From IMG/VR virus record IMGVR_UViG_3300044796_000662, positions 62,001 through 126,000 of that record: DNA of 64,000 bases; one strand, given 5' to 3'. The position numbers were made by a program, and so were the translations under genes. A model generated the notes under the pieces. It had not been told where the DNA came from and did not search any database. It worked only from the letters and a program-made list of their open reading frames with translations. How positions within the stretch are numbered: the first letter of the stretch is position 1; the number at the start of each line of letters is the position of its first letter. Shown in pieces: positions 26,778-51,925 of this stretch.

Positions 26778-28061
26778 CTACGCGCGGGCCTTCAGAGTCC
26801 GACGCCCATCGACGATGATCGGCACTCCCTTACCCGTGATCACGTCGGCCGTGATGCGGATGCTCGCGATGTCCATGCTTGGACCATCGTAGGCGTAGGG
26901 TGCGAGAGTCTCCTCCAGGATCGAACGGAGCCCACGCGCTCCCGTGGGTCGGCGCTTCGCCTCCTGGCCGATGGCCAGGAGAGCATCCGTGTCGAACTGC
27001 AAGTCGATGTCGTCCATGGCGAAGAGCGCCTGGTACTGCTTCACGAGGGCGTTCTTCGGCTCCGTGAGCACCTTGACCATGTCCTCGTCAGACAGCTCCA
27101 GCGTGCTCGTAACGATGGGCAGACGGCCGAGCATCTCGGGGATGATCCCGAACTCCAAGATGTCCTCGCCCTTGACCTCCGTGTAGACCTCGTTGAGCGT
27201 GAGCTTGCGCCGCTTCGTGTCCTCCGAGCCGAAGCCGAGCCGCGAGGACTTGTTCACCCGCTGCTCTACCACCTCGTCGATGCCCGCGAAGCTGCCCGCA
27301 GCAACGAACAGGATGTTGGTCGTATCGAGCACGTCCACGTTCGAGCGCACCTCGCCGTTGGGGCCTACAGACGTCACGGACACGTTCTTGCCCATCCCAC
27401 GCGTGACGGGCACAGAGCAGCCTTCCAAGGTCCGCAGCATGCCTTGCTGGACGCCTTCGCCCGTGATGTCGCGGTAACCGGAGGCGGAACGTCCGCTCTT
27501 GCGGGCGATCTTGTCGAATTCGTCGAGCAAGATGATGCCCCACTCGGCGCGCTGGATGTCCCCGCCGGCGTTCTGGACGAGCCCGCGAAGCATGTCGTCC
27601 GCGTCGTCGCCCACGTAGCCTTGCTGCGTCAGCCGGGTGCAGTCCTGCGTGTAGAACGGGACCTTCAGAAGCTCGCTGATCGCCCTGAACGTCTCGGTCT
27701 TGCCCGAGCCAGTGGGGCCGAGGATCAGCATGTTGGACTTCTGGACCTTGATCGAGCCCGCCTTCTTGGCCCGAGCCGCGTCCCTACGCTTGAAGTGGTG
27801 GTAGACCGCGGTGGAGACCGCCCTCTTCAGCCTTTCCTGCGCGATGATGTGCTCGTCGAGGTACGCCTTGATCTGATGGGGCGTCCCAAGGACGGGCTCC
27901 CGCTTCTTGTCGCCCTTGGGGGCCGACTGCTCGATGAGGTTCGAGGCTCCTTCCACGCACGTCTCGCAGATGTAGACGCCGTTGCCCTTGATCAGGCGGT
28001 TGTTGGGGACCTCGTTCTTCTCGGACCCACAGAAAGAGCACACCTCGTGGTCGGTCGGCAT
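26778..28061 (-). CDS. clpX: ATP-dependent Clp protease ATPase subunit ClpX
   Basis: CSFC..C..C zinc domain, GPTGSGKT, GYVG pore loop, DEFDK, GEGVQQ, LGF loop, TGARGLR. Confidence 0.93.
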   Translation of the reverse strand: MPTDHEVCSFCGSEKNEVPNNRLIKGNGVYICETCVEGASNLIEQSAPKGDKKREPVLGTPHQIKAYLDEHIIAQERLKRAVSTAVYHHFKRRDAARAKKAGSIKVQKSNMLILGPTGSGKTETFRAISELLKVPFYTQDCTRLTQQGYVGDDADDMLRGLVQNAGGDIQRAEWGIILLDEFDKIARKSGRSASGYRDITGEGVQQGMLRTLEGCSVPVTRGMGKNVSVTSVGPNGEVRSNVDVLDTTNILFVAAGSFAGIDEVVEQRVNKSSRLGFGSEDTKRRKLTLNEVYTEVKGEDILEFGIIPEMLGRLPIVTSTLELSDEDMVKVLTEPKNALVKQYQALFAMDDIDLQFDTDALLAIGQEAKRRPTGARGLRSILEETLAPYAYDGPSMDIASIRITADVITGKGVPIIVDGRRTLKARA

Positions 28062-30538: not shown

Positions 30539-31897
30539 TCAGCCCTTGGCGGTGATGGTCTGGTCTCCGCGCCGCACCGTCCAGTCGTCTGGATCGGTGT
30601 CAACGTGAAGAGAGACGACGGGAAACATCTCGCGGAACGGTCGAATGAAGCTCTCATGCACCGCTCGCCGAAGCGTCGGGTGCACGGTCTTGCCGGACCT
30701 CAGCTCCATGACGTAGACCGCCGCAGACAACCCATAGGTCACGTGACAGGGGACGCGGAAGCCGAGCGGCGTGTAATACTGGCGCACCACCGGGTCATCG
30801 GAGAGGCCAGCGATTTGAACCGAAAGCTCCACGATGAGGTCTTTCGCAGCATGCGCGAGATCATCATCGAGCTGGTCTAGGTACCAGGGCTCGAAGCCGT
30901 GGGTAGTTGAGAGCAGTGGCATCCGGCAGACACCGTTGCGGTGACGCTGAAGGTCCCGGAAGGATCCGAAGTCGAGCAAGAACGAGAAGCTGAACTGCCC
31001 CAGGTCGTTCAAGAAGTGCGGAAGCACACAGCCACGAGGCCGTGTCTTGAGCACGTCCCGATACTGGAGTAGGTCGAACCGATTGATGCTCGCGTCGAAC
31101 TTCGAGCCGGACATGATGTCCGTGAAGTACGTGTACCTGTCGGCGACGAGCTGTTCCCACGAGGCCCGTGCTTCTCGCGCCTCGTCACCCCCTGTCGTGC
31201 CGACGCCGCTCACGGAGGCTAGCCCAAGACCCACACCGCTTGAGCGGTAGGTGTCTTGTAGCAAGCCCTGAAGACCAGTACCGATTCGCCGAATCTCCTC
31301 GGACGGGTGCTTCGAGAGCAGTAGCAGGTGATCTCCTGCCTGGCGAAGGTTCGTGTGCCAGGAGAGCTGAGTGCAGATGCCAGCGGGCAGGAAGCCGCGC
31401 AAGATGTCGAAGGCCCGTGCCTTGACCGCACGTTCGTAGGAGTCTTCCTTCTCCCCATCGCGCCGCGGGTAACGTTGACGAACCGTGTTCGCGACTCGGT
31501 CCATGTTGGACGTGTAGAAGGCCATCCAGCGCCGGAGCACCTCCTTGGACTTGTCAGTCCCCACGGGATCCTCGATGCGCTGCTTGCTCATGTCGATGTA
31601 GCGCGTGCTCGTCTCCTGCCCGCTGTAGAGAGGCCAGTCCTGAATGGCCTTTGCCGCGAGGGTGCTCACGCCTTCGATGAAAAGGGTCGTGGACCCGCAG
31701 TCCGCGATCGACTTGTGGCCGTAGCCGACATAGTAGCTCGACATGAACTTGCCCGAGCCGGACTTGGCGACCTTCTCCAAGTGCACCTCGGCACTCTCCG
31801 CACTGCGCGAGTAGAGAGCCTGCACCATCGCGATGTCCTCGGGCGAGAGGTCATCGACCACGATCAGCTTGACACCTTCGGTCTGTTGAACCTTCAT
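30539..31897 (-). CDS. thyX: Flavin-dependent thymidylate synthase (two Thy1-type domains)
   Basis: YYVGYGHKSIAD, GQETSTRY, FRDLQRHR; ATGA overlap sets the start at 31897. Confidence 0.88.
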   Translation of the reverse strand: MKVQQTEGVKLIVVDDLSPEDIAMVQALYSRSAESAEVHLEKVAKSGSGKFMSSYYVGYGHKSIADCGSTTLFIEGVSTLAAKAIQDWPLYSGQETSTRYIDMSKQRIEDPVGTDKSKEVLRRWMAFYTSNMDRVANTVRQRYPRRDGEKEDSYERAVKARAFDILRGFLPAGICTQLSWHTNLRQAGDHLLLLSKHPSEEIRRIGTGLQGLLQDTYRSSGVGLGLASVSGVGTTGGDEAREARASWEQLVADRYTYFTDIMSGSKFDASINRFDLLQYRDVLKTRPRGCVLPHFLNDLGQFSFSFLLDFGSFRDLQRHRNGVCRMPLLSTTHGFEPWYLDQLDDDLAHAAKDLIVELSVQIAGLSDDPVVRQYYTPLGFRVPCHVTYGLSAAVYVMELRSGKTVHPTLRRAVHESFIRPFREMFPVVSLHVDTDPDDWTVRRGDQTITAKG

Positions 31898-32631
31898 GCC
31901 CGACTCCGGTAGTTCTTGAGAATCTCGTGCAGCCGGCAATCCGGCTTGTGCTTGGGGATCTTGGCGCCGCTTTCCTCAGCACTGCACACGCGGCAGTAGT
32001 TGCCCTCGTGGCTGTACGACCACGAGTCCCACTCGGCCTCGTCGAGCAACTCGATTGCGCTGGCCTTGCGTTGGAAGTGGATCACACGGTCGATGACGTC
32101 GGGCCAGTCCTTCACACGCCACTTGTCCATGGGCATGTTGCGCACGTTGGCGATGGGCCAGAGCATGGCGAGGCCGTCCGGATGCTCTGCCTGCCACGCC
32201 AGCACGTGGTCCGGCTTGTCATCCAGGCAGATGTCTGCCGAAATGAGGTACTTCGCCGCCGTGTGCACGATCTCGGACTTCGCGAAGTTGAAGTGCTCCA
32301 TGAGCCACCTGTCCCGCTCGTAGACCCACGTCATCGAGTGGAAATGCGAGGTCACGGCGAAGAGCTTGACGTGCTTGCGCAGCTCCCCGACAGCATGCTG
32401 AGCACCGGGCAGCGGCTTGAGCCCCGCGCACCACCCAGGCTTTTCGCATTCGGCGAGGAGTACCTTGGTCTCCTCGTTAGTGAAGATCGTGAACAGGTCC
32501 CAGACGGTGCCGTCAAAGGATTGAGGGCTCACATCCTTGCCAAACAGTCGCTTGGCGGCCTCGAAGACTGGGCCCTGGAAGTCGGCCAAGACCTCGTCCA
32601 CGTCGATCCACATACGCTTTTGGGTCGGCAT
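31894..32631 (-). CDS. HAD-family 5'(3')-deoxyribonucleotidase with C-terminal Cys/His extension
   Basis: IDVDEVLADF, PLPGA, VTS, R..WL..HF, CLDDK. Confidence 0.85.
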   Translation of the reverse strand: MPTQKRMWIDVDEVLADFQGPVFEAAKRLFGKDVSPQSFDGTVWDLFTIFTNEETKVLLAECEKPGWCAGLKPLPGAQHAVGELRKHVKLFAVTSHFHSMTWVYERDRWLMEHFNFAKSEIVHTAAKYLISADICLDDKPDHVLAWQAEHPDGLAMLWPIANVRNMPMDKWRVKDWPDVIDRVIHFQRKASAIELLDEAEWDSWSYSHEGNYCRVCSAEESGAKIPKHKPDCRLHEILKNYRSRA

Positions 32632-46531: not shown

Positions 46532-47890
46532 TTAGCTCAGGATGGGCAGAAGCAGATCTAGCTGTTCCTTCGGGAGCTTACCGATGGCGTAGAACGAGAC
46601 CATCTCGGCGAAGTTCTCGCCGGGGCCGCCCTTCTTGGCGTAGCCCGTGATGAAGTCCAGCGGGTCCACCTTCTGCTCAACACCGTTGAGCTTGAAGAAC
46701 ATGGCCGCCGGCATGACGATCGTCTCCCTGCGGGCGATGGGGAACTTGTGCTCCTCATCGGGCTCGTGCTCAGCCCGGCCCTTCTCTGCGCAGACGAAGC
46801 ACCGCAGAGGGTTGGCCGGGGCGAGCTTCACGGAGCGGCGACGGGTATCGCGCTCGATGACCTTCCAAGGCTCCCCCTTATAGGGGACTGACGCGCCAAA
46901 CGCGGGCAGCTCGGTTTCCGACATGAAGCCCGTGTGCGTGTTGATCGTGGAGTAGAGCTGCGAGATCTCGTGCTCTTTGCCTTGCAGGAACTTGTGCTCC
47001 AGCCGGTGCGTCAGCTCGTGACAGAGAACCCGGACGGTGTCCATGTTCACCTTCGAGTCGGCACGAATGAACATCTCGTCCTTGGCGACGACGTAGAACG
47101 CCGCCCAGTTGGGCCGCTCGATGCGGTTGGACAGGATGATGTCCCCGTAGTTGACCTTCCCCAAGCCGATGCCTGCCATCTTTTGAGCGGCCTCTTCGGC
47201 GAGCTTGGCGATGTTCTGCATCTGCTCCGTGCTGAAGCCGCCCGAGTTGACGAGCGTGAAAGGCCCGGCCTTGAACCGCGTTGCGCCCTCTCCCTCGCCT
47301 GCGTGCTGCTTGCCCTGGCTGATCGCGATCTCGAAGACCTTCTCCTGCTTGCGGAAGTCTTCGAGGAAGTCGAGGTAGATCTGGACAGCCTTGGCTCGCG
47401 CCTCTTCGTAGGTGCGGCCCCGTGTGCTGAAGCGCGGCGTACGGGCGTAGAACTTCGCGATAGCCTCAATCGCTTTGCGAGGCTTCGGCGGCAGCACAAG
47501 CTGTTGCAGGATGGCCCAGCACAGGTTCTGCGCGACGTCCTGGATCTTGCCCCATCCGTGCTGCATCGAGTGAGTGGTGATCTCGTACGACAGGTCGCGC
47601 TCTTTGCGACGCTTGCCGTCCTGGGACTCTTCGATGGTCTGGACCAGCGCGTTCTCACGGACGGCCTTGATCTTCTCGGCGGGGGCGCCTTCGGCCTGTA
47701 GCTTCGTGACCTCGGCGAATGCCTCCACGTACTTCTTGGCCATCGCCTCCTTCTCGGCGTACTTGGCCACGGCCCTCTTGAACTGCGCAAGCAGATCCCC
47801 GGGGTCGCCGAAAGAGTCGGCCCGCTTCGAACGTTCGGCGACCCGCGAGGCGAGGACGACGCGCTCTACAACTCGATCCAAGGACTTCAT
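46532..47890 (-). CDS. Zincin-like metallopeptidase protein with RVA-type leader
   Basis: LCHELTHRLEH...GENFAEMVSFY; leader SRVAERSKRA. Confidence 0.75.
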   Translation of the reverse strand: MKSLDRVVERVVLASRVAERSKRADSFGDPGDLLAQFKRAVAKYAEKEAMAKKYVEAFAEVTKLQAEGAPAEKIKAVRENALVQTIEESQDGKRRKERDLSYEITTHSMQHGWGKIQDVAQNLCWAILQQLVLPPKPRKAIEAIAKFYARTPRFSTRGRTYEEARAKAVQIYLDFLEDFRKQEKVFEIAISQGKQHAGEGEGATRFKAGPFTLVNSGGFSTEQMQNIAKLAEEAAQKMAGIGLGKVNYGDIILSNRIERPNWAAFYVVAKDEMFIRADSKVNMDTVRVLCHELTHRLEHKFLQGKEHEISQLYSTINTHTGFMSETELPAFGASVPYKGEPWKVIERDTRRRSVKLAPANPLRCFVCAEKGRAEHEPDEEHKFPIARRETIVMPAAMFFKLNGVEQKVDPLDFITGYAKKGGPGENFAEMVSFYAIGKLPKEQLDLLLPILS

Positions 47891-49150: not shown

Positions 49151-49558
49151 TCACCTCAGGGTCGGCTTGAGCCGATTGAGCACCGTGATGTTCGCGTCCA
49201 GGACCCCGAGCTTGTGGCGCATGATGTCGAGCGCCTTCACGTGGTCGAACTCCTTGCACGAGAAGATGTCGAGGCTGAAGAAGCGCTGGAGCGGCCAGCA
49301 ATGCACGCTCAGATGGCTCGTCGAGATGATGCAGGTGCCGGTGATGCCGCCCTCATCCTCGAACTTGCCCGTCTCCTCGACGCGCTTGAGCACTTCGGGA
49401 TCCACGGGAACCTCGATGAAGTCGGGTCCCTTGAGGATCGCCATGTCGAGTGCCTTCACCACGTCGCGGAAGAGCCCCGTCAGGTTCTCCGCCGTGAAGA
49501 CCTTCGCGTCCTTGACGTACCCGTCCACCACCACGTGGCGGCCTGCCGATGCGTTCAT
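49151..49558 (-). CDS. speD: Pyruvoyl-dependent S-adenosylmethionine decarboxylase family protein
   Basis: GRHVVVDG, GGITG..IISTSHLSVHCWP, LDIFSC. Confidence 0.85.
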   Translation of the reverse strand: MNASAGRHVVVDGYVKDAKVFTAENLTGLFRDVVKALDMAILKGPDFIEVPVDPEVLKRVEETGKFEDEGGITGTCIISTSHLSVHCWPLQRFFSLDIFSCKEFDHVKALDIMRHKLGVLDANITVLNRLKPTLR

Positions 49559-49573: not shown

Positions 49574-50032
49574 TCATGCACGCTTGGACGTTGGAATGAA
49601 CAGACTACCAGCCGAGCGCATCTCGACTTCGGGCCTTGCGGCCACCCCCTGATACTGCTCCAGTGCCGCGTTCACGATCTGCGTGATGAAGTGTCCAGGT
49701 GACGCCTTGGGCGACAGATCGAAGGCCAGCTCGTGCTTCCGACCACCGCCACCGTGCGCTCCCATAGACTGGTAGTCCAGGACGGCGATGACCTGCAAAC
49801 CCTCATCGAACGAGAGAGTCACGCGGAACTGGTGCATGAGGTCCCCCGCGCGTGCGAGCACCTCGACTTCGGCCCGCATGTGGCCCTCGTTGAACTTCGC
49901 ACCGGACACATGCGCGTGCGTGCCGCTCGCGATACCTGCCCCGATCTTCTCGGCGATCGAGGTGAGGTAGTTCGCGACCAGGCTTTCCAGCCCCGCATCC
50001 GCGACCTTGCGACGATCGTAGGTGTAGCTCAC
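49574..50032 (-). CDS. Hypothetical protein with YTYDRR leader
   Basis: GAGGAG SD, GTGA overlap. Confidence 0.65.
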   Translation of the reverse strand: MSYTYDRRKVADAGLESLVANYLTSIAEKIGAGIASGTHAHVSGAKFNEGHMRAEVEVLARAGDLMHQFRVTLSFDEGLQVIAVLDYQSMGAHGGGGRKHELAFDLSPKASPGHFITQIVNAALEQYQGVAARPEVEMRSAGSLFIPTSKRA

Positions 50033-50313
50033 GGCTCGCTCTCCTCGCGTCGTGTCTCTTGCCGCTCTTCGCGACGAAAACGATGACTGCCTCCGGGCTT
50101 GTGAGCCCAAACGCCAGCCTCAATGTACCCGATGTTGAACCTGGCCAAGATCGTCTCGATCTCGGCGGCAACGGGCAGCTCCGCAGGGTCTTCAACCCAA
50201 CCACGGCTACGCCCCTTGCGAACTACCTCACTGGCGATGAAGGCAGCATCCTCCAGCGCGCCGTCGTAGTGAAGGTTCGCCCGACGTTCGAAGGAAGAGC
50301 GACGGTCGTACAT
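50029..50313 (-). CDS. Small protein with MYDRR leader
   Basis: ATG 50313, 5 nt after the lipoprotein stop. Confidence 0.6.
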   Translation of the reverse strand: MYDRRSSFERRANLHYDGALEDAAFIASEVVRKGRSRGWVEDPAELPVAAEIETILARFNIGYIEAGVWAHKPGGSHRFRREERQETRREESEP

Positions 50314-50318
50314 CTCCG

Positions 50319-50645
50319 TCAGTTCTTGCACGCCCAGCCGCACGCGCGAATCGCTGCTTGCGACTTCGCTGCGGAGAGGCAAAGAGTGTTGGGGTGCGGC
50401 ATCCCGGGATCAGCCAGCATGTTGGAACATGTCGAGGCGCAATCCGCGAAGGCACCCTCAGGGCACCCGACTGCGGCCGCTGCTGCACACGCCGCAGCGC
50501 ACGGGCTCGAAGCCGGTGCGGGAGTGGGCACAGGAACGGGCACGGAAGAGTCCGTGGCGTCGGGGGGAGGCGTGACGTTCGACGGCGTGCAACCTGGCAT
50601 CGCCATGAAAGCCGACAGGCATGCGAGAAAAGCGAGGGTCTTCAT
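50319..50645 (-). CDS. Cys-rich Pro-linker lipoprotein
   Basis: Signal peptide MKTLAFLACLSAFMAMPGC, PVPVPTP linker, 8 further Cys; ATGA overlap. Confidence 0.72.
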   Translation of the reverse strand: MKTLAFLACLSAFMAMPGCTPSNVTPPPDATDSSVPVPVPTPAPASSPCAAACAAAAAVGCPEGAFADCASTCSNMLADPGMPHPNTLCLSAAKSQAAIRACGWACKN

Positions 50646-51520
50646 GTGCTGCTCCTGACGGTCCATCCGTAGAGGTCCGTGGCGCTCTGGATCCAGGACT
50701 GTTGTGCCCAGAAGTGGCCAGCGTCACCGTAGCCGGCACCCCACGAGTTGCAGATCTCCCAATCGACCGTACCCGGATTCACGGTCGAGGGTCGGTAGCC
50801 CACGATGCAGATCCAGTGGCCGCCGCCGTTGGGGTCGCTCGTGTTCGGAGAGCCGACAGGAGCGCTCGTGGAGGTGAAGTTCATCACCTGGCTGTCCACG
50901 AAGATGCCGATGCCGACCGGAGCCTTCGCAACCGCGAGGCACTGTTGAACGAGAGACACGACATCCGAGGAGGACTCGTCGATGCGGTACTCGCCGACGA
51001 TGAGCTTCTGCCCGGCCTGTTCGAGGGACAGAAAGTCCACCTCGGAGTTGACGTTCGGCGCCGGCGCGTTGGGGATTCCAGCGACGTCCACTGCGGACCA
51101 GATGTCCGAGTTGCGTCCGTCTGGCGTGGGGCCTTGCATCGCACGGATGCCGTAACGCCCAACCGCGATCATGACGTCCGAGGGCATGGCGCCCGAGTCG
51201 GTCAGCGGCACGGTGTTGACCGCGCGCTCCATCGACCGGGTCACGCCGTAGGTCGTGAGGGGAGAGGGAACGAAGCTGAGAGGCACGCCTTGCAAGGCAC
51301 TGCCAATCACGATGCCTTGAGCCGTGCCGTGCCCCGTGCAGGAGCCGGTCTGACCCTGGTCCAGAATCGGAGCTTCGTTGGAACGGTAGCTCACTGCGCT
51401 GGGAAGGGCCGTAGAGCCCATCTTCGCGAGCAGAGCGCGAACGTCCTTCTGAGTCCGCTTCTCGGGAGCGTCGGGGGTGTAGCCGAAGAAACGGCCGCCG
51501 GATTGCTGAACGCCAGGCAT
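50642..51520 (-). CDS. Papain-like (C1) cysteine peptidase
   Basis: DQGQTGSCTGHG, GGHWICIVGY, CNSWG: Q/C/H/N catalytic set intact. Confidence 0.9.
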   Translation of the reverse strand: MPGVQQSGGRFFGYTPDAPEKRTQKDVRALLAKMGSTALPSAVSYRSNEAPILDQGQTGSCTGHGTAQGIVIGSALQGVPLSFVPSPLTTYGVTRSMERAVNTVPLTDSGAMPSDVMIAVGRYGIRAMQGPTPDGRNSDIWSAVDVAGIPNAPAPNVNSEVDFLSLEQAGQKLIVGEYRIDESSSDVVSLVQQCLAVAKAPVGIGIFVDSQVMNFTSTSAPVGSPNTSDPNGGGHWICIVGYRPSTVNPGTVDWEICNSWGAGYGDAGHFWAQQSWIQSATDLYGWTVRSST

Positions 51521-51537
51521 CGGAACCTCTGGGGGTG

Positions 51538-51574
51538 AAAAAGCCGACTGCGAGGGTCGTCCCCGCAGTCGGCT
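51538..51574 (-). terminator. Intrinsic terminator
   Basis: 11-bp stem AGCCGACTGCG/CGCAGTCGGCT followed by a U tract on the minus strand, just after the holin-like gene. Confidence 0.85.
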
Positions 51575-51580
51575 AGATCG

Positions 51581-51925
51581 TCACTTCGCGGCGGGAGGAG
51601 CCGGGACGGGCGCCGGGGCCGGCTTCGGCGGGGCGACGTTGCCGGTCAGAGACTCCAGGTGTAGCGATGCGGCACCGCCCGTGATCATGCCCATGAAGGC
51701 TTGAGCGATCGAGTAGCCGATGGTGTCTCCCTGCTGGAGACCTGCGACGAAACCGGCACCGAGACCGAGCACGAGGCCGAGGTACGGCGCTGCCTTCGGG
51801 GGAAGGCTCGGGATCGAATACGTGGCGAGCCACGCATTGAGGGTGTTGCTCTGGAGCGCTCCCAGAAGCACGTGGATTGCCGCTGCGATGCTAGCAAGCC
51901 AGATGGCGGTGGTCGTGAGGTTCAT
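51581..51925 (-). CDS. Holin-like small multi-pass membrane protein
   Basis: 114 aa, about 3 hydrophobic segments, Pro-rich C-tail; GAGGA SD. Confidence 0.62.
   Translation of the reverse strand: MNLTTTAIWLASIAAAIHVLLGALQSNTLNAWLATYSIPSLPPKAAPYLGLVLGLGAGFVAGLQQGDTIGYSIAQAFMGMITGGAASLHLESLTGNVAPPKPAPAPVPAPPAAK

What the first reader, a model, noticed from the sequence alone, without database searches (positions are those of the whole stretch)
50319..51925. Possible non-canonical lysis cassette: holin-like gene, papain-family protease, Cys-rich lipoprotein
Seen: directly after the tail genes come a 3-TM small protein, an intact C1 peptidase without a signal peptide, and a translationally coupled lipoprotein with a Pro-rich linker. 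This mirrors the holin/endolysin/spanin order, and no classical endolysin is visible in the window. A terminator after the holin-like gene would lower downstream expression. Inference: the C1 protease acts as the lysin (on peptide cross-links or envelope proteins), or the lipoprotein is its inhibitor or anchor.
Basis: inference. Interest (0 to 1): 0.6.

Follow-up and report, generated by a model that had tools for sequence, protein, structure and literature searches.

The report
Phage lysis-region protease with lipoprotein partner
A huge soil/peat phage carries a papain-type protease gene that is always followed by a small cysteine-rich lipoprotein predicted to dock onto it; related phages keep this pair inside their cell-bursting gene clusters, next to ordinary wall-cutting enzymes, so it is probably an undescribed helper for lysis and not a replacement lysin.

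Summary
On the minus strand lie a 114-aa protein with three hydrophobic segments (51581-51925), a strong hairpin with a T-run, a leaderless 292-aa C1A peptidase with all catalytic residues (50642-51520), and a lipoprotein whose ATG overlaps the peptidase stop (50319-50645).

The window is part of a 363-kb huge-phage record. The peptidase is xylellain-type (model pLDDT 93; best solved match 3OIS).

The new point is the pairing. In 24 of 25 related loci, down to about 33% identity, the same Cys-rich lipoprotein domain is encoded 99-320 nt downstream on the same strand. A co-fold supports binding (ipSAE 0.82, best control 0.01). The predicted interface is variable and lies away from the catalytic residues, which fits an anchor better than an inhibitor.

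In smaller relatives the pair sits inside lysis cassettes, directly beside GH25 or Amidase_2 endolysins and small holin-like genes. All four complete relatives have a canonical wall hydrolase. No canonical endolysin was found in this record among 15 families, but the record is only about 76% complete. The substrate is unknown.

The parts
51581..51925 (-). Small membrane protein, 114 aa, three hydrophobic segments and a Pro-rich C-terminal tail. It is a holin candidate only.
   Evidence: ORF and sequence. Codon-position bias against L019. Homologous N-terminal domain in L019, L024 and L004. No Pfam, PHROG or NCBIfam hit. Weak look-alikes among Hol118/Hol44-type holins: feature score 0.84, TM 0.64.
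51537..51574 (-). Intrinsic-terminator-like hairpin (14-bp stem) plus T-run, between the membrane-protein gene and the peptidase gene.
   Evidence: Fold -31.4 kcal/mol, z -3.5. Stem conserved with a compensatory change in L019, T-run not conserved.
50642..51520 (-). Leaderless xylellain-type papain-family (C1A) cysteine peptidase, 292 aa. Catalytic residues Q55, C61, H235, N258.
   Evidence: Pfam PF00112. PDB sequence match 3OIS, E 4e-12, full length. AlphaFold pLDDT 93.2. Foldseek 3OIS E 1e-15. Invariant catalytic residues in 36 homologues.
50319..50645 (-). Lipoprotein, 108 aa: signal peptide with lipobox, Pro-rich linker of about 28 aa, and a 60-aa all-helical Cys-rich domain. Its ATG overlaps the peptidase stop (ATGA). 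It is the predicted docking partner of the peptidase.
   Evidence: Sequence. Conserved domain with 4 invariant Cys. Encoded just downstream of the peptidase in 24 of 25 loci. Model with domain pLDDT 81-90 and no solved look-alike, best Z 2.5. Co-fold ipSAE 0.82 against control 0.01. 848 cluster representatives in the big search, almost all small lipoproteins.

Best explanation
The peptidase and lipoprotein genes form a conserved two-gene accessory lysis module.

The lipoprotein is exported by Sec, lipidated and, because it lacks Asp at position +2, probably sorted to the outer membrane. It hangs into the periplasm on a Pro-rich tether. The peptidase has no signal peptide, so it stays in the cytoplasm until a holin permeabilises the inner membrane, as a classical endolysin does. 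It then docks through its helical (L) domain onto the Cys-rich head of the lipoprotein and cuts peptide bonds in the envelope. The targets would be peptidoglycan stem or cross-link peptides, or proteins that tie the outer membrane to the wall. In this way it helps the muramidase or amidase endolysin finish lysis.

Shown: the gene structure, the intact catalytic set, the near-obligate gene pairing, and the position inside lysis cassettes of relatives.
Predicted: the binding and the interface.
Inferred: the compartments, the timing and the substrate.

The upstream three-segment membrane protein may be the holin or another membrane partner. That is not settled.
For: - Catalytic residues are invariant and the fold is papain-like.
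- There is no signal peptide in any of the 36 aligned family members.
- The lipoprotein domain lies 99-320 nt downstream on the same strand in 24 of 25 loci, with start/stop overlap in at least 7.
- The co-fold gives ipSAE 0.82 against a best control of 0.01. Runs agree in at least 95% of contacts and partner pLDDT is 91. This mark was reached by 58 of 80 solved complexes and 2 of 110 mismatched pairs.
- The interface (residues 93-104, 122-123, 160-167) excludes Q55, C61, H235 and N258. It is more variable than the protein average (entropy 2.21 against 1.80), as expected for a co-evolving docking surface.
- Lysis-cassette context in relatives:
  - L026: peptidase, lipoprotein, GH25, SLT-like.
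  - G017: peptidase, lipoprotein, 54-aa two-TM protein, 82-aa protein, Amidase_2.
  - G019 and G004: GH25 0.7-1.1 kb downstream.
  - Distant L013: VanY-like, small TM protein, GH24, C1 peptidase, lipoprotein.
- Phage proteins with this fold carry source names that point to wall targeting ('Peptidoglycan binding-like', 484 aa; 'N acetylmuramidase'), so they may be fusions with wall-binding domains.
- The +2 residue is Pro, Ala or Thr in nearly all relatives; Asp occurs in 1 of 119.
Against: - There is no biochemical evidence, and the substrate is unknown.
- A terminator-like hairpin separates the membrane-protein gene from the peptidase gene.
- In L021/L022 no membrane protein lies upstream.
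- In G012, G014 and G015 the canonical hydrolase lies 17-25 kb away.
- In several temperate relatives the pair lies a few kb from the integrase, which is also where lysogenic-conversion genes sit.
- The co-fold used my own alignments, so its calibration holds only roughly.
- No transcription data: the RNA library holds the phage as a 34-kb contig, which proves nothing.
Confidence: 0.55

Rival explanations
1. The C1 peptidase is this phage's only endolysin. It degrades peptidoglycan cross-links by itself, with the three-segment membrane protein as holin and the lipoprotein as a spanin-like third component.
For: - None of 15 wall-hydrolase or wall-binding Pfam families is found in the 363-kb record.
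- No homologue of relatives' GH25, SLT-like, GH24, M15 or PG-binding proteins is found by tblastn.
- The gene order mimics holin, endolysin, spanin.
- BFVD look-alikes named 'Peptidoglycan binding-like' and 'N acetylmuramidase' suggest that C1-fold domains can be wall-directed.
Against: - The record is 76% complete by CheckV, and the identical protein also occurs on a 570-kb contig, so a quarter to a third of the genome was not searched.
- The 240-kb huge relative has Amidase_2 and a PG_binding_1 protein.
- All four complete relatives have GH24, GH25 or Amidase_2.
- No i-spanin-type partner is present.
Confidence: 0.15
2. The lipoprotein is an inhibitor or immunity protein that neutralises peptidase reaching the periplasm too early. 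This would parallel protease-inhibitor gene pairs such as the staphopain/staphostatin pair or the Bacteroides C10 protease with its lipoprotein inhibitor.
For: - Tight translational coupling would give fixed stoichiometry.
- Binding is predicted.
- There is precedent for cysteine-protease genes followed by lipoprotein inhibitor genes on mobile elements (PMC2873492), and for a membrane-anchored chagasin-like inhibitor (bioRxiv 10.64898/2026.06.02.729523).
Against: - The predicted interface does not touch the catalytic Cys, His or Asn or the DSG loop next to the cleft.
- The domain is all-helical, not the beta fold of staphostatins or chagasins.
- The enzyme and the lipoprotein are made in different compartments.
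Confidence: 0.12
3. The pair is not a lysis function. It would be a lysogenic-conversion or envelope-remodelling module, for example one that trims surface or periplasmic host proteins for superinfection exclusion.
For: - It lies near the integrase in several temperate relatives.
- The pair persists in a contig flanked by bacterial two-component and sigma-54 regulator genes (L022).
- A hairpin precedes the peptidase gene.
Against: - A leaderless enzyme cannot reach the envelope of a living lysogen without membrane damage.
- The pair is interleaved with holin-like and endolysin genes in G017, L026, G019 and G004.
- It is co-directional with and embedded in a long gene array in the huge phage.
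Confidence: 0.1

Closest known systems
Xylellain (Xylella fastidiosa C1A cysteine peptidase, PDB 3OIS) and other short bacterial C1A peptidases
   Same: Same fold and catalytic residues, similar length, and a conserved N-terminal G-Y-x-P-D segment. It is the best sequence and structure match. Acquisition of xylellain-type C1A genes by tailed phages has been noted (PMC10380794).
   Different: Only about 23% identity. This subfamily is always paired with a Cys-rich lipoprotein gene and sits in phage lysis regions. No such partner or role is described for xylellain. The phage also has a second, more typical xylellain-like copy without a partner.
Cysteine-peptidase endolysin domains of clan CA (CHAP, NlpC/P60, mycobacteriophage LysA N4/N5 domains)
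   Same: A papain-like Cys-His enzyme, encoded in lysis cassettes, leaderless, acting together with glycosidase or amidase activities (PMC3314691).
   Different: It belongs to family C1, not C51, C40 or C39-like. It is a separate polypeptide and not a domain of a modular lysin. Targeting seems to be supplied in trans by a lipoprotein. No wall activity has been shown.
Two-component endolysins and lipoprotein adaptors of wall hydrolases (my own knowledge, not tested here: PlyC with PlyCA/PlyCB; NlpI-MepS; LpoA/B-PBPs)
   Same: A catalytic subunit plus a separately encoded targeting or docking subunit. The outer-membrane lipoproteins reach the wall on long flexible linkers.
   Different: No sequence or fold relation. 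Here the adaptor is phage-encoded, lipidated and Cys-rich, and the enzyme is a C1 peptidase.
Spanins (Rz/Rz1) and mycobacteriophage LysB as third-step lysis factors
   Same: A small Pro-rich, Cys-containing lipoprotein in a lysis cassette. Like LysB, it may be an enzyme that attacks what is left after the wall is cut.
   Different: The window has no i-spanin with an N-terminal TM segment. No Rz-family hit was found in 10 records. The lipoprotein has a folded 60-aa head and binds an enzyme.
Cysteine protease with lipoprotein inhibitor pairs (Bacteroides fragilis Bfp/Bfi, staphopain/staphostatin)
   Same: A protease gene followed by a small lipoprotein gene on mobile elements (PMC2873492).
   Different: The protease family differs (C10/C47) and those proteases are secreted. 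Their inhibitors are beta-barrels that occupy the cleft. Here the partner is helical and is predicted to bind away from the cleft.

Membership tests
Peptidase family C1 (papain family, subfamily C1A) | Papain fold with L and R domains | tested here: met
   Model pLDDT 93.2. Foldseek finds xylellain at E 1e-15, then procathepsins.
Peptidase family C1 (papain family, subfamily C1A) | Catalytic Cys and His, with Asn and the oxyanion Gln, in the canonical order | tested here: met
   Q55, C61, H235, N258 and W260 are invariant in 36 homologues.
Peptidase family C1 (papain family, subfamily C1A) | Profile match above the curated cut-off | tested here: met
   PF00112 scores 28.6 bits against 20.7, but only over residues 196-274. 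Full-length match to 3OIS at E 4e-12.
Peptidase family C1 (papain family, subfamily C1A) | Proteolytic activity | not testable with these tools
   Needs enzyme assays.
Canonical phage endolysin | Catalytic domain of a known muralytic family | tested here: not met
   Only Peptidase_C1 is found.
Canonical phage endolysin | Encoded in a lysis cassette beside a holin | tested here: inconclusive
   True in relatives G017, L026, G019 and G004. In the window the neighbour is only a holin candidate.
Canonical phage endolysin | Degrades host peptidoglycan | not testable with these tools
   Needs zymography or muropeptide analysis.
Holin | Small protein with at least one TM segment | tested here: met
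   114 aa with three hydrophobic segments.
Holin | Highly charged hydrophilic C-terminus | tested here: not met
   The tail is Pro/Ala-rich with two Lys.
Holin | Match to a described holin family | tested here: not met
   No Pfam, PHROG or NCBIfam hit. Only sub-threshold look-alikes.
Holin | Forms lethal membrane lesions that release the endolysin | not testable with these tools
   Needs expression or complementation tests.
o-spanin (Rz1-like) | Small lipoprotein with lipobox, Pro-rich | tested here: met
   Lipobox A-M-P-G-C and a Pro-rich linker.
o-spanin (Rz1-like) | Paired with, or embedded in, an i-spanin gene (N-terminal TM segment plus coiled coil) | tested here: not met
   The flanking ORFs lack such a protein. 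No PF03245 hit in 10 records.
Staphostatin/chagasin-type cysteine-protease inhibitor | Beta-barrel or Ig-like fold that occupies the active-site cleft | tested here: not met
   All-helical model. No solved look-alike. The predicted interface avoids the catalytic residues.

The most novel reading that the evidence does not exclude
The module is a new kind of third-step lysis device, a protease-armed substitute for spanins. An outer-membrane lipoprotein captures a holin-released C1 peptidase at the inner face of the outer membrane, where it cuts the protein tethers or outer-membrane proteins that hold the envelope together after the wall is degraded. In many relatives a membrane- or lipid-anchored Cys-containing periplasmic domain is encoded just upstream or nearby and could take part. 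No Rz-type spanin was detected in ten related phage records, and the hosts appear to be diderm soil bacteria (Syntrophobacteraceae-like, and possibly Myxococcota).
Probability: 0.2. Interest if true: 0.8.

Novelty: new variant of a known kind. Interest (0 to 1): 0.6.

Why it matters
Phage lysis of diderm bacteria is described as three steps: holin, endolysin, then spanin or disruptin. A widespread, unannotated module that pairs a papain-family peptidase with its own lipoprotein docking subunit would add a component to that scheme.

The scale is not small. The peptidase has at least 187 relatives, and the lipoprotein domain has 848 cluster representatives.

It would also give a first functional context to the xylellain-type C1A peptidases that tailed phages acquired repeatedly, and define a new small disulfide-rich lipoprotein domain with no family assignment.

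In practice, gene callers miss the lipoprotein gene in high-GC phages. Huge-phage annotations that report no endolysin should therefore be read with care.

Tried and rejected
- DNA similarity to 50,697 phage records: no match. By protein, a single hit in a 595-kb uncultured phage.
- Genome-contig scan with the peptidase profile: nothing confirmed. The family seems rare or absent in species-representative genomes.
- PHROG, Pfam and NCBIfam for the membrane protein and the lipoprotein: nothing.
- Solved-structure search for the lipoprotein head: best Z 2.5, so no known fold can be named. The Atlas shape search gave only weak Myxococcota lipoprotein clusters, TM about 0.4.
- The consensus terminator scan missed the hairpin. 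Direct folding found it.
- Whole-genome Pfam tally of the complete relative G017 through alignments A5-A7 suggested no wall hydrolase. This was an artefact of my crude gene caller, which took the wrong strand at the amidase gene. The six-frame family search found Amidase_2 there. I reject the tally as evidence.
- Read laying: the runs are kept as contigs only. The RNA library holds the locus within a 34-kb contig, so neither transcription nor terminator use can be judged.
- No alternative genetic code was needed or used.
- Virion or prohead protease role: rejected, because the obligate partner is an exported lipoprotein.

Full report
**Setting.** The window is bases 62001-126000 of a 362,937-bp IMG/VR virus record with uniform 62.6% GC, estimated 76% complete. 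The identical peptidase also occurs on a 569,965-bp contig, so this is a huge phage, found in peat and soil metagenomes. Nearly all genes in the window run on the minus strand. Downstream of the finding lie an S-adenosylmethionine decarboxylase, an SNF2 helicase, DnaB, primase and a family A DNA polymerase. Upstream lie very large proteins of 1520 and 861 aa with no family assignment beyond weak hints. 'After the tail genes' is therefore plausible but unverified.

**Observation.**
- The membrane protein is best read as 114 aa (51581-51925), starting at an ATG behind a good ribosome-binding site. It has three hydrophobic segments and a Pro-rich tail.
- Sixty bases separate it from the peptidase gene. 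They hold a 14-bp GC-rich hairpin followed by five T (-31.4 kcal/mol, z -3.5). The stem is kept in the 82% relative L019 through a compensatory change, but the T-run is not.
- The peptidase (50642-51520, 292 aa) has no hydrophobic N-terminus.
- The lipoprotein (50319-50645, 108 aa) starts at an ATG that overlaps the peptidase stop (ATGA). It carries a lipobox, a Pro-rich linker of about 28 residues and eight further cysteines.
- For all three genes, differences from L019 pile up at third codon positions, so all three frames are under purifying selection.
- Public gene calls for this phage missed the lipoprotein gene and called antisense ORFs instead.

**The peptidase.** Pfam Peptidase_C1 matches only the C-terminal third. 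The whole protein aligns to xylellain, PDB 3OIS (E 4e-12). The AlphaFold model (pLDDT 93.2) matches xylellain, procathepsins and Legionella Lpg2622. In an alignment of 36 homologues the papain oxyanion Gln, the catalytic Cys, His and Asn, and the following Trp are invariant (Q55, C61, H235, N258, W260). It is an intact C1A peptidase. The word search found 187 relatives, all unnamed, many on long viral contigs. A review of the papain family already notes that xylellain-type C1A genes entered tailed phages (PMC10380794), but it gives no function. The phage has a second, more typical xylellain-like gene at genome position 350854-351636, with no lipoprotein next to it.

**The pairing.**
- I built HMMs of the peptidase and of the lipoprotein's Cys-rich head and scanned 25 loci fetched from viral and metagenomic contigs. 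In 24 the head is encoded on the same strand, 99-320 nt after the end of the peptidase frame. The exception is the most distant locus, at 30% identity.
- In at least seven loci the lipoprotein start overlaps the peptidase stop.
- The head has four invariant cysteines, models as a small helical bundle and has no solved look-alike (best Z 2.5).
- A profile search of 1.8 billion representatives found 848 clusters. Almost all are 70-170-aa proteins with a lipobox and a Pro-rich linker, and Asp at +2 occurs in 1 of 119. This is a large unannotated lipoprotein family.

**Binding.** The co-fold of the peptidase with residues 44-108 of the lipoprotein scored ipSAE 0.82, against 0.01 for the best of three controls. 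The runs agree in at least 95% of contacts and partner pLDDT is 91. This mark was reached by 58 of 80 solved complexes and 2 of 110 mismatched pairs, and those counts hold only roughly because my own alignments were used. The peptidase residues involved (93-104, 122-123, 160-167) lie in the helical L domain and do not include the catalytic residues. They are more variable than the protein average. This fits a partner-specific docking surface and argues against a cleft-plugging inhibitor.

**Genomic context in relatives.**
- Huge-phage relatives (L019, L024, L004) keep the same order: giant protein, membrane protein, peptidase, lipoprotein, SNF2 helicase.
- Smaller temperate phages place the pair at the end of the late region, often a few kb from the integrase.
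- Several show an unmistakable lysis cassette:
  - L026: peptidase, lipoprotein, GH25, SLT-like, plus small lipoproteins and TM proteins.
  - G017: peptidase, lipoprotein, a 54-aa two-TM protein, an 82-aa protein, Amidase_2.
  - G019 and G004: GH25 0.7-1.1 kb downstream.
  - L114: an Rv2525c-like glycosidase, a weak match.
- A distant C1 peptidase in a low-GC phage (L013) sits between a GH24 lysozyme and a lipoprotein.
- Elsewhere the canonical hydrolase is further away: 5.7-6.3 kb in L116 and G003, about 17 kb in G014 and G015, and 25 kb in G012.
- All four complete genomes have a canonical hydrolase, and so does the 240-kb relative G002 (Amidase_2 and a PG_binding_1 protein).

**Own genome.** Fifteen wall-hydrolase or wall-binding families gave no hit in the 363-kb record: SLT, GH24, GH25, Amidase_2, Amidase_3, M23, NlpC/P60, GH19, M15_4, PG_binding_1, CHAP, Rv2525c-like, VanY, Muramidase and GH108. 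For three of these the control genomes were also silent. tblastn with relatives' enzymes gave nothing either. With a quarter to a third of the genome missing, this cannot show that the peptidase is the only lysin.

**The membrane protein.** Homologues of its three-segment domain occur in the huge-phage clade. In L024 the domain is fused to a further TM or lipobox-like segment and a Cys-containing helical domain. That second part is a separate gene in L004, L008 and L117, and part of 200-290-aa membrane proteins in L023, L006, L114, L116 and L129. The window lacks this second domain. Feature and shape look-alikes point weakly to Hol118/Hol44-type holins. G017 has a separate small two-TM holin-like gene, so the upstream membrane protein need not be the holin. 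I treat it as a holin candidate only.

**Host.** The same gene pair occurs in a contig flanked by bacterial regulators whose best relatives are Syntrophobacteraceae (89%). Look-alike clusters of the lipoprotein are Myxococcota, which is weak evidence. A diderm host is likely.

**Interpretation.** The most economical reading has four steps.
1. The lipoprotein waits in the periplasm.
2. The leaderless peptidase arrives when the inner membrane is breached.
3. It docks onto the lipoprotein head.
4. It cleaves envelope peptides, supplementing the canonical endolysin.

Two BFVD look-alikes whose source names point to the cell wall ('Peptidoglycan binding-like', 'N acetylmuramidase') suggest that this fold is used against the wall in other phages. 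That favours peptidoglycan peptides as substrate, but protein tethers of the outer membrane remain possible. No Rz-type spanin was detected in ten records, which is weak evidence.

I found no paper describing a C1 peptidase with a lipoprotein partner in phage lysis. The nearest analogies are cysteine-peptidase domains of mycobacteriophage LysA (PMC3314691) and the C10 protease with lipoprotein inhibitor pairs of Bacteroides (PMC2873492).

**Limits.** Everything about activity, compartment, timing and substrate is inference. The co-fold is a prediction. The read data cannot show transcription. My first whole-genome Pfam tally of G017 was wrong because of a strand error in my gene caller, and the six-frame search corrected it.

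Noticed in passing
outside the window: G000:C1:350854-351636 (+), locus L002: A second, more typical xylellain-like C1 peptidase (260 aa, about 27-31% identity to the first). It has no lipoprotein gene beside it and lies among auxiliary genes that I read by eye as CoaD-like, CYTH-like and phosphatase-like.
   Followed up: partly
window 49151-49558 (-): A phage-encoded S-adenosylmethionine decarboxylase (PF02675, E 1.5e-16; phrog_3125), three genes downstream of the lipoprotein.
   Followed up: no
window 26778-28061 (-) and 30539-31939 (-): A ClpX-like AAA+ ATPase with the ClpX zinc finger, and a ThyX-type thymidylate synthase, both in the phage.
   Followed up: no
window 46532-47890 (-): A 452-aa protein with an H-E-x-x-H motif (HELTH) and no family hit. 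It is conserved next to a 419-aa protein in the 82% relative and may be a metallopeptidase.
   Followed up: no
window 50029-50313 (-) and 49574-50110 (-): Two small genes just after the lipoprotein gene begin with a similar Y-D-R-R motif and are conserved in L019/L020. Function unknown.
   Followed up: no
window 50059-50658 (+); loci L030-L032: Public gene calls for this phage annotate antisense ORFs (129-191 aa) over the lipoprotein gene. The real gene is missed in high-GC DNA.
   Followed up: yes
L004:5476-5898, L008:7253-7537, L117:5696-6004, C-terminal parts of L024:7228-8001, L114:5393-6001, L116:5192-6004: A further conserved component in relatives: a TM- or lipid-anchored helical periplasmic domain with 2-4 Cys. 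It is fused to the multi-TM protein or encoded separately, and it is absent from the window's phage.
   Followed up: partly
L033:601-1710 (G002, 240-kb relative): A 369-aa protein with a C-terminal PG_binding_1 domain and a 300-aa N-terminal domain without any Pfam match. It may be a novel wall hydrolase. No homologue was found in the window's record.
   Followed up: partly
L022 (23.7-kb contig) against L021 (98.8-kb contig): The identical peptidase-lipoprotein pair, with three neighbouring genes, occurs both in a phage-like contig and in a contig flanked by bacterial two-component and sigma-54 regulator genes (Syntrophobacteraceae-like). This could be a prophage remnant or a domesticated module.
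   Followed up: partly
BFVD entries A0A6J5MXS7, A0A8S5PQA2, A0A8S5SPG9: Phage proteins of 370-480 aa in which this C1-like fold covers only part of the chain. Their source names are 'Peptidoglycan binding-like', 'N acetylmuramidase' and 'Copper amine oxidase', which hints at fusions with wall-binding or wall-cutting domains. I did not examine their domain architecture.
   Followed up: no
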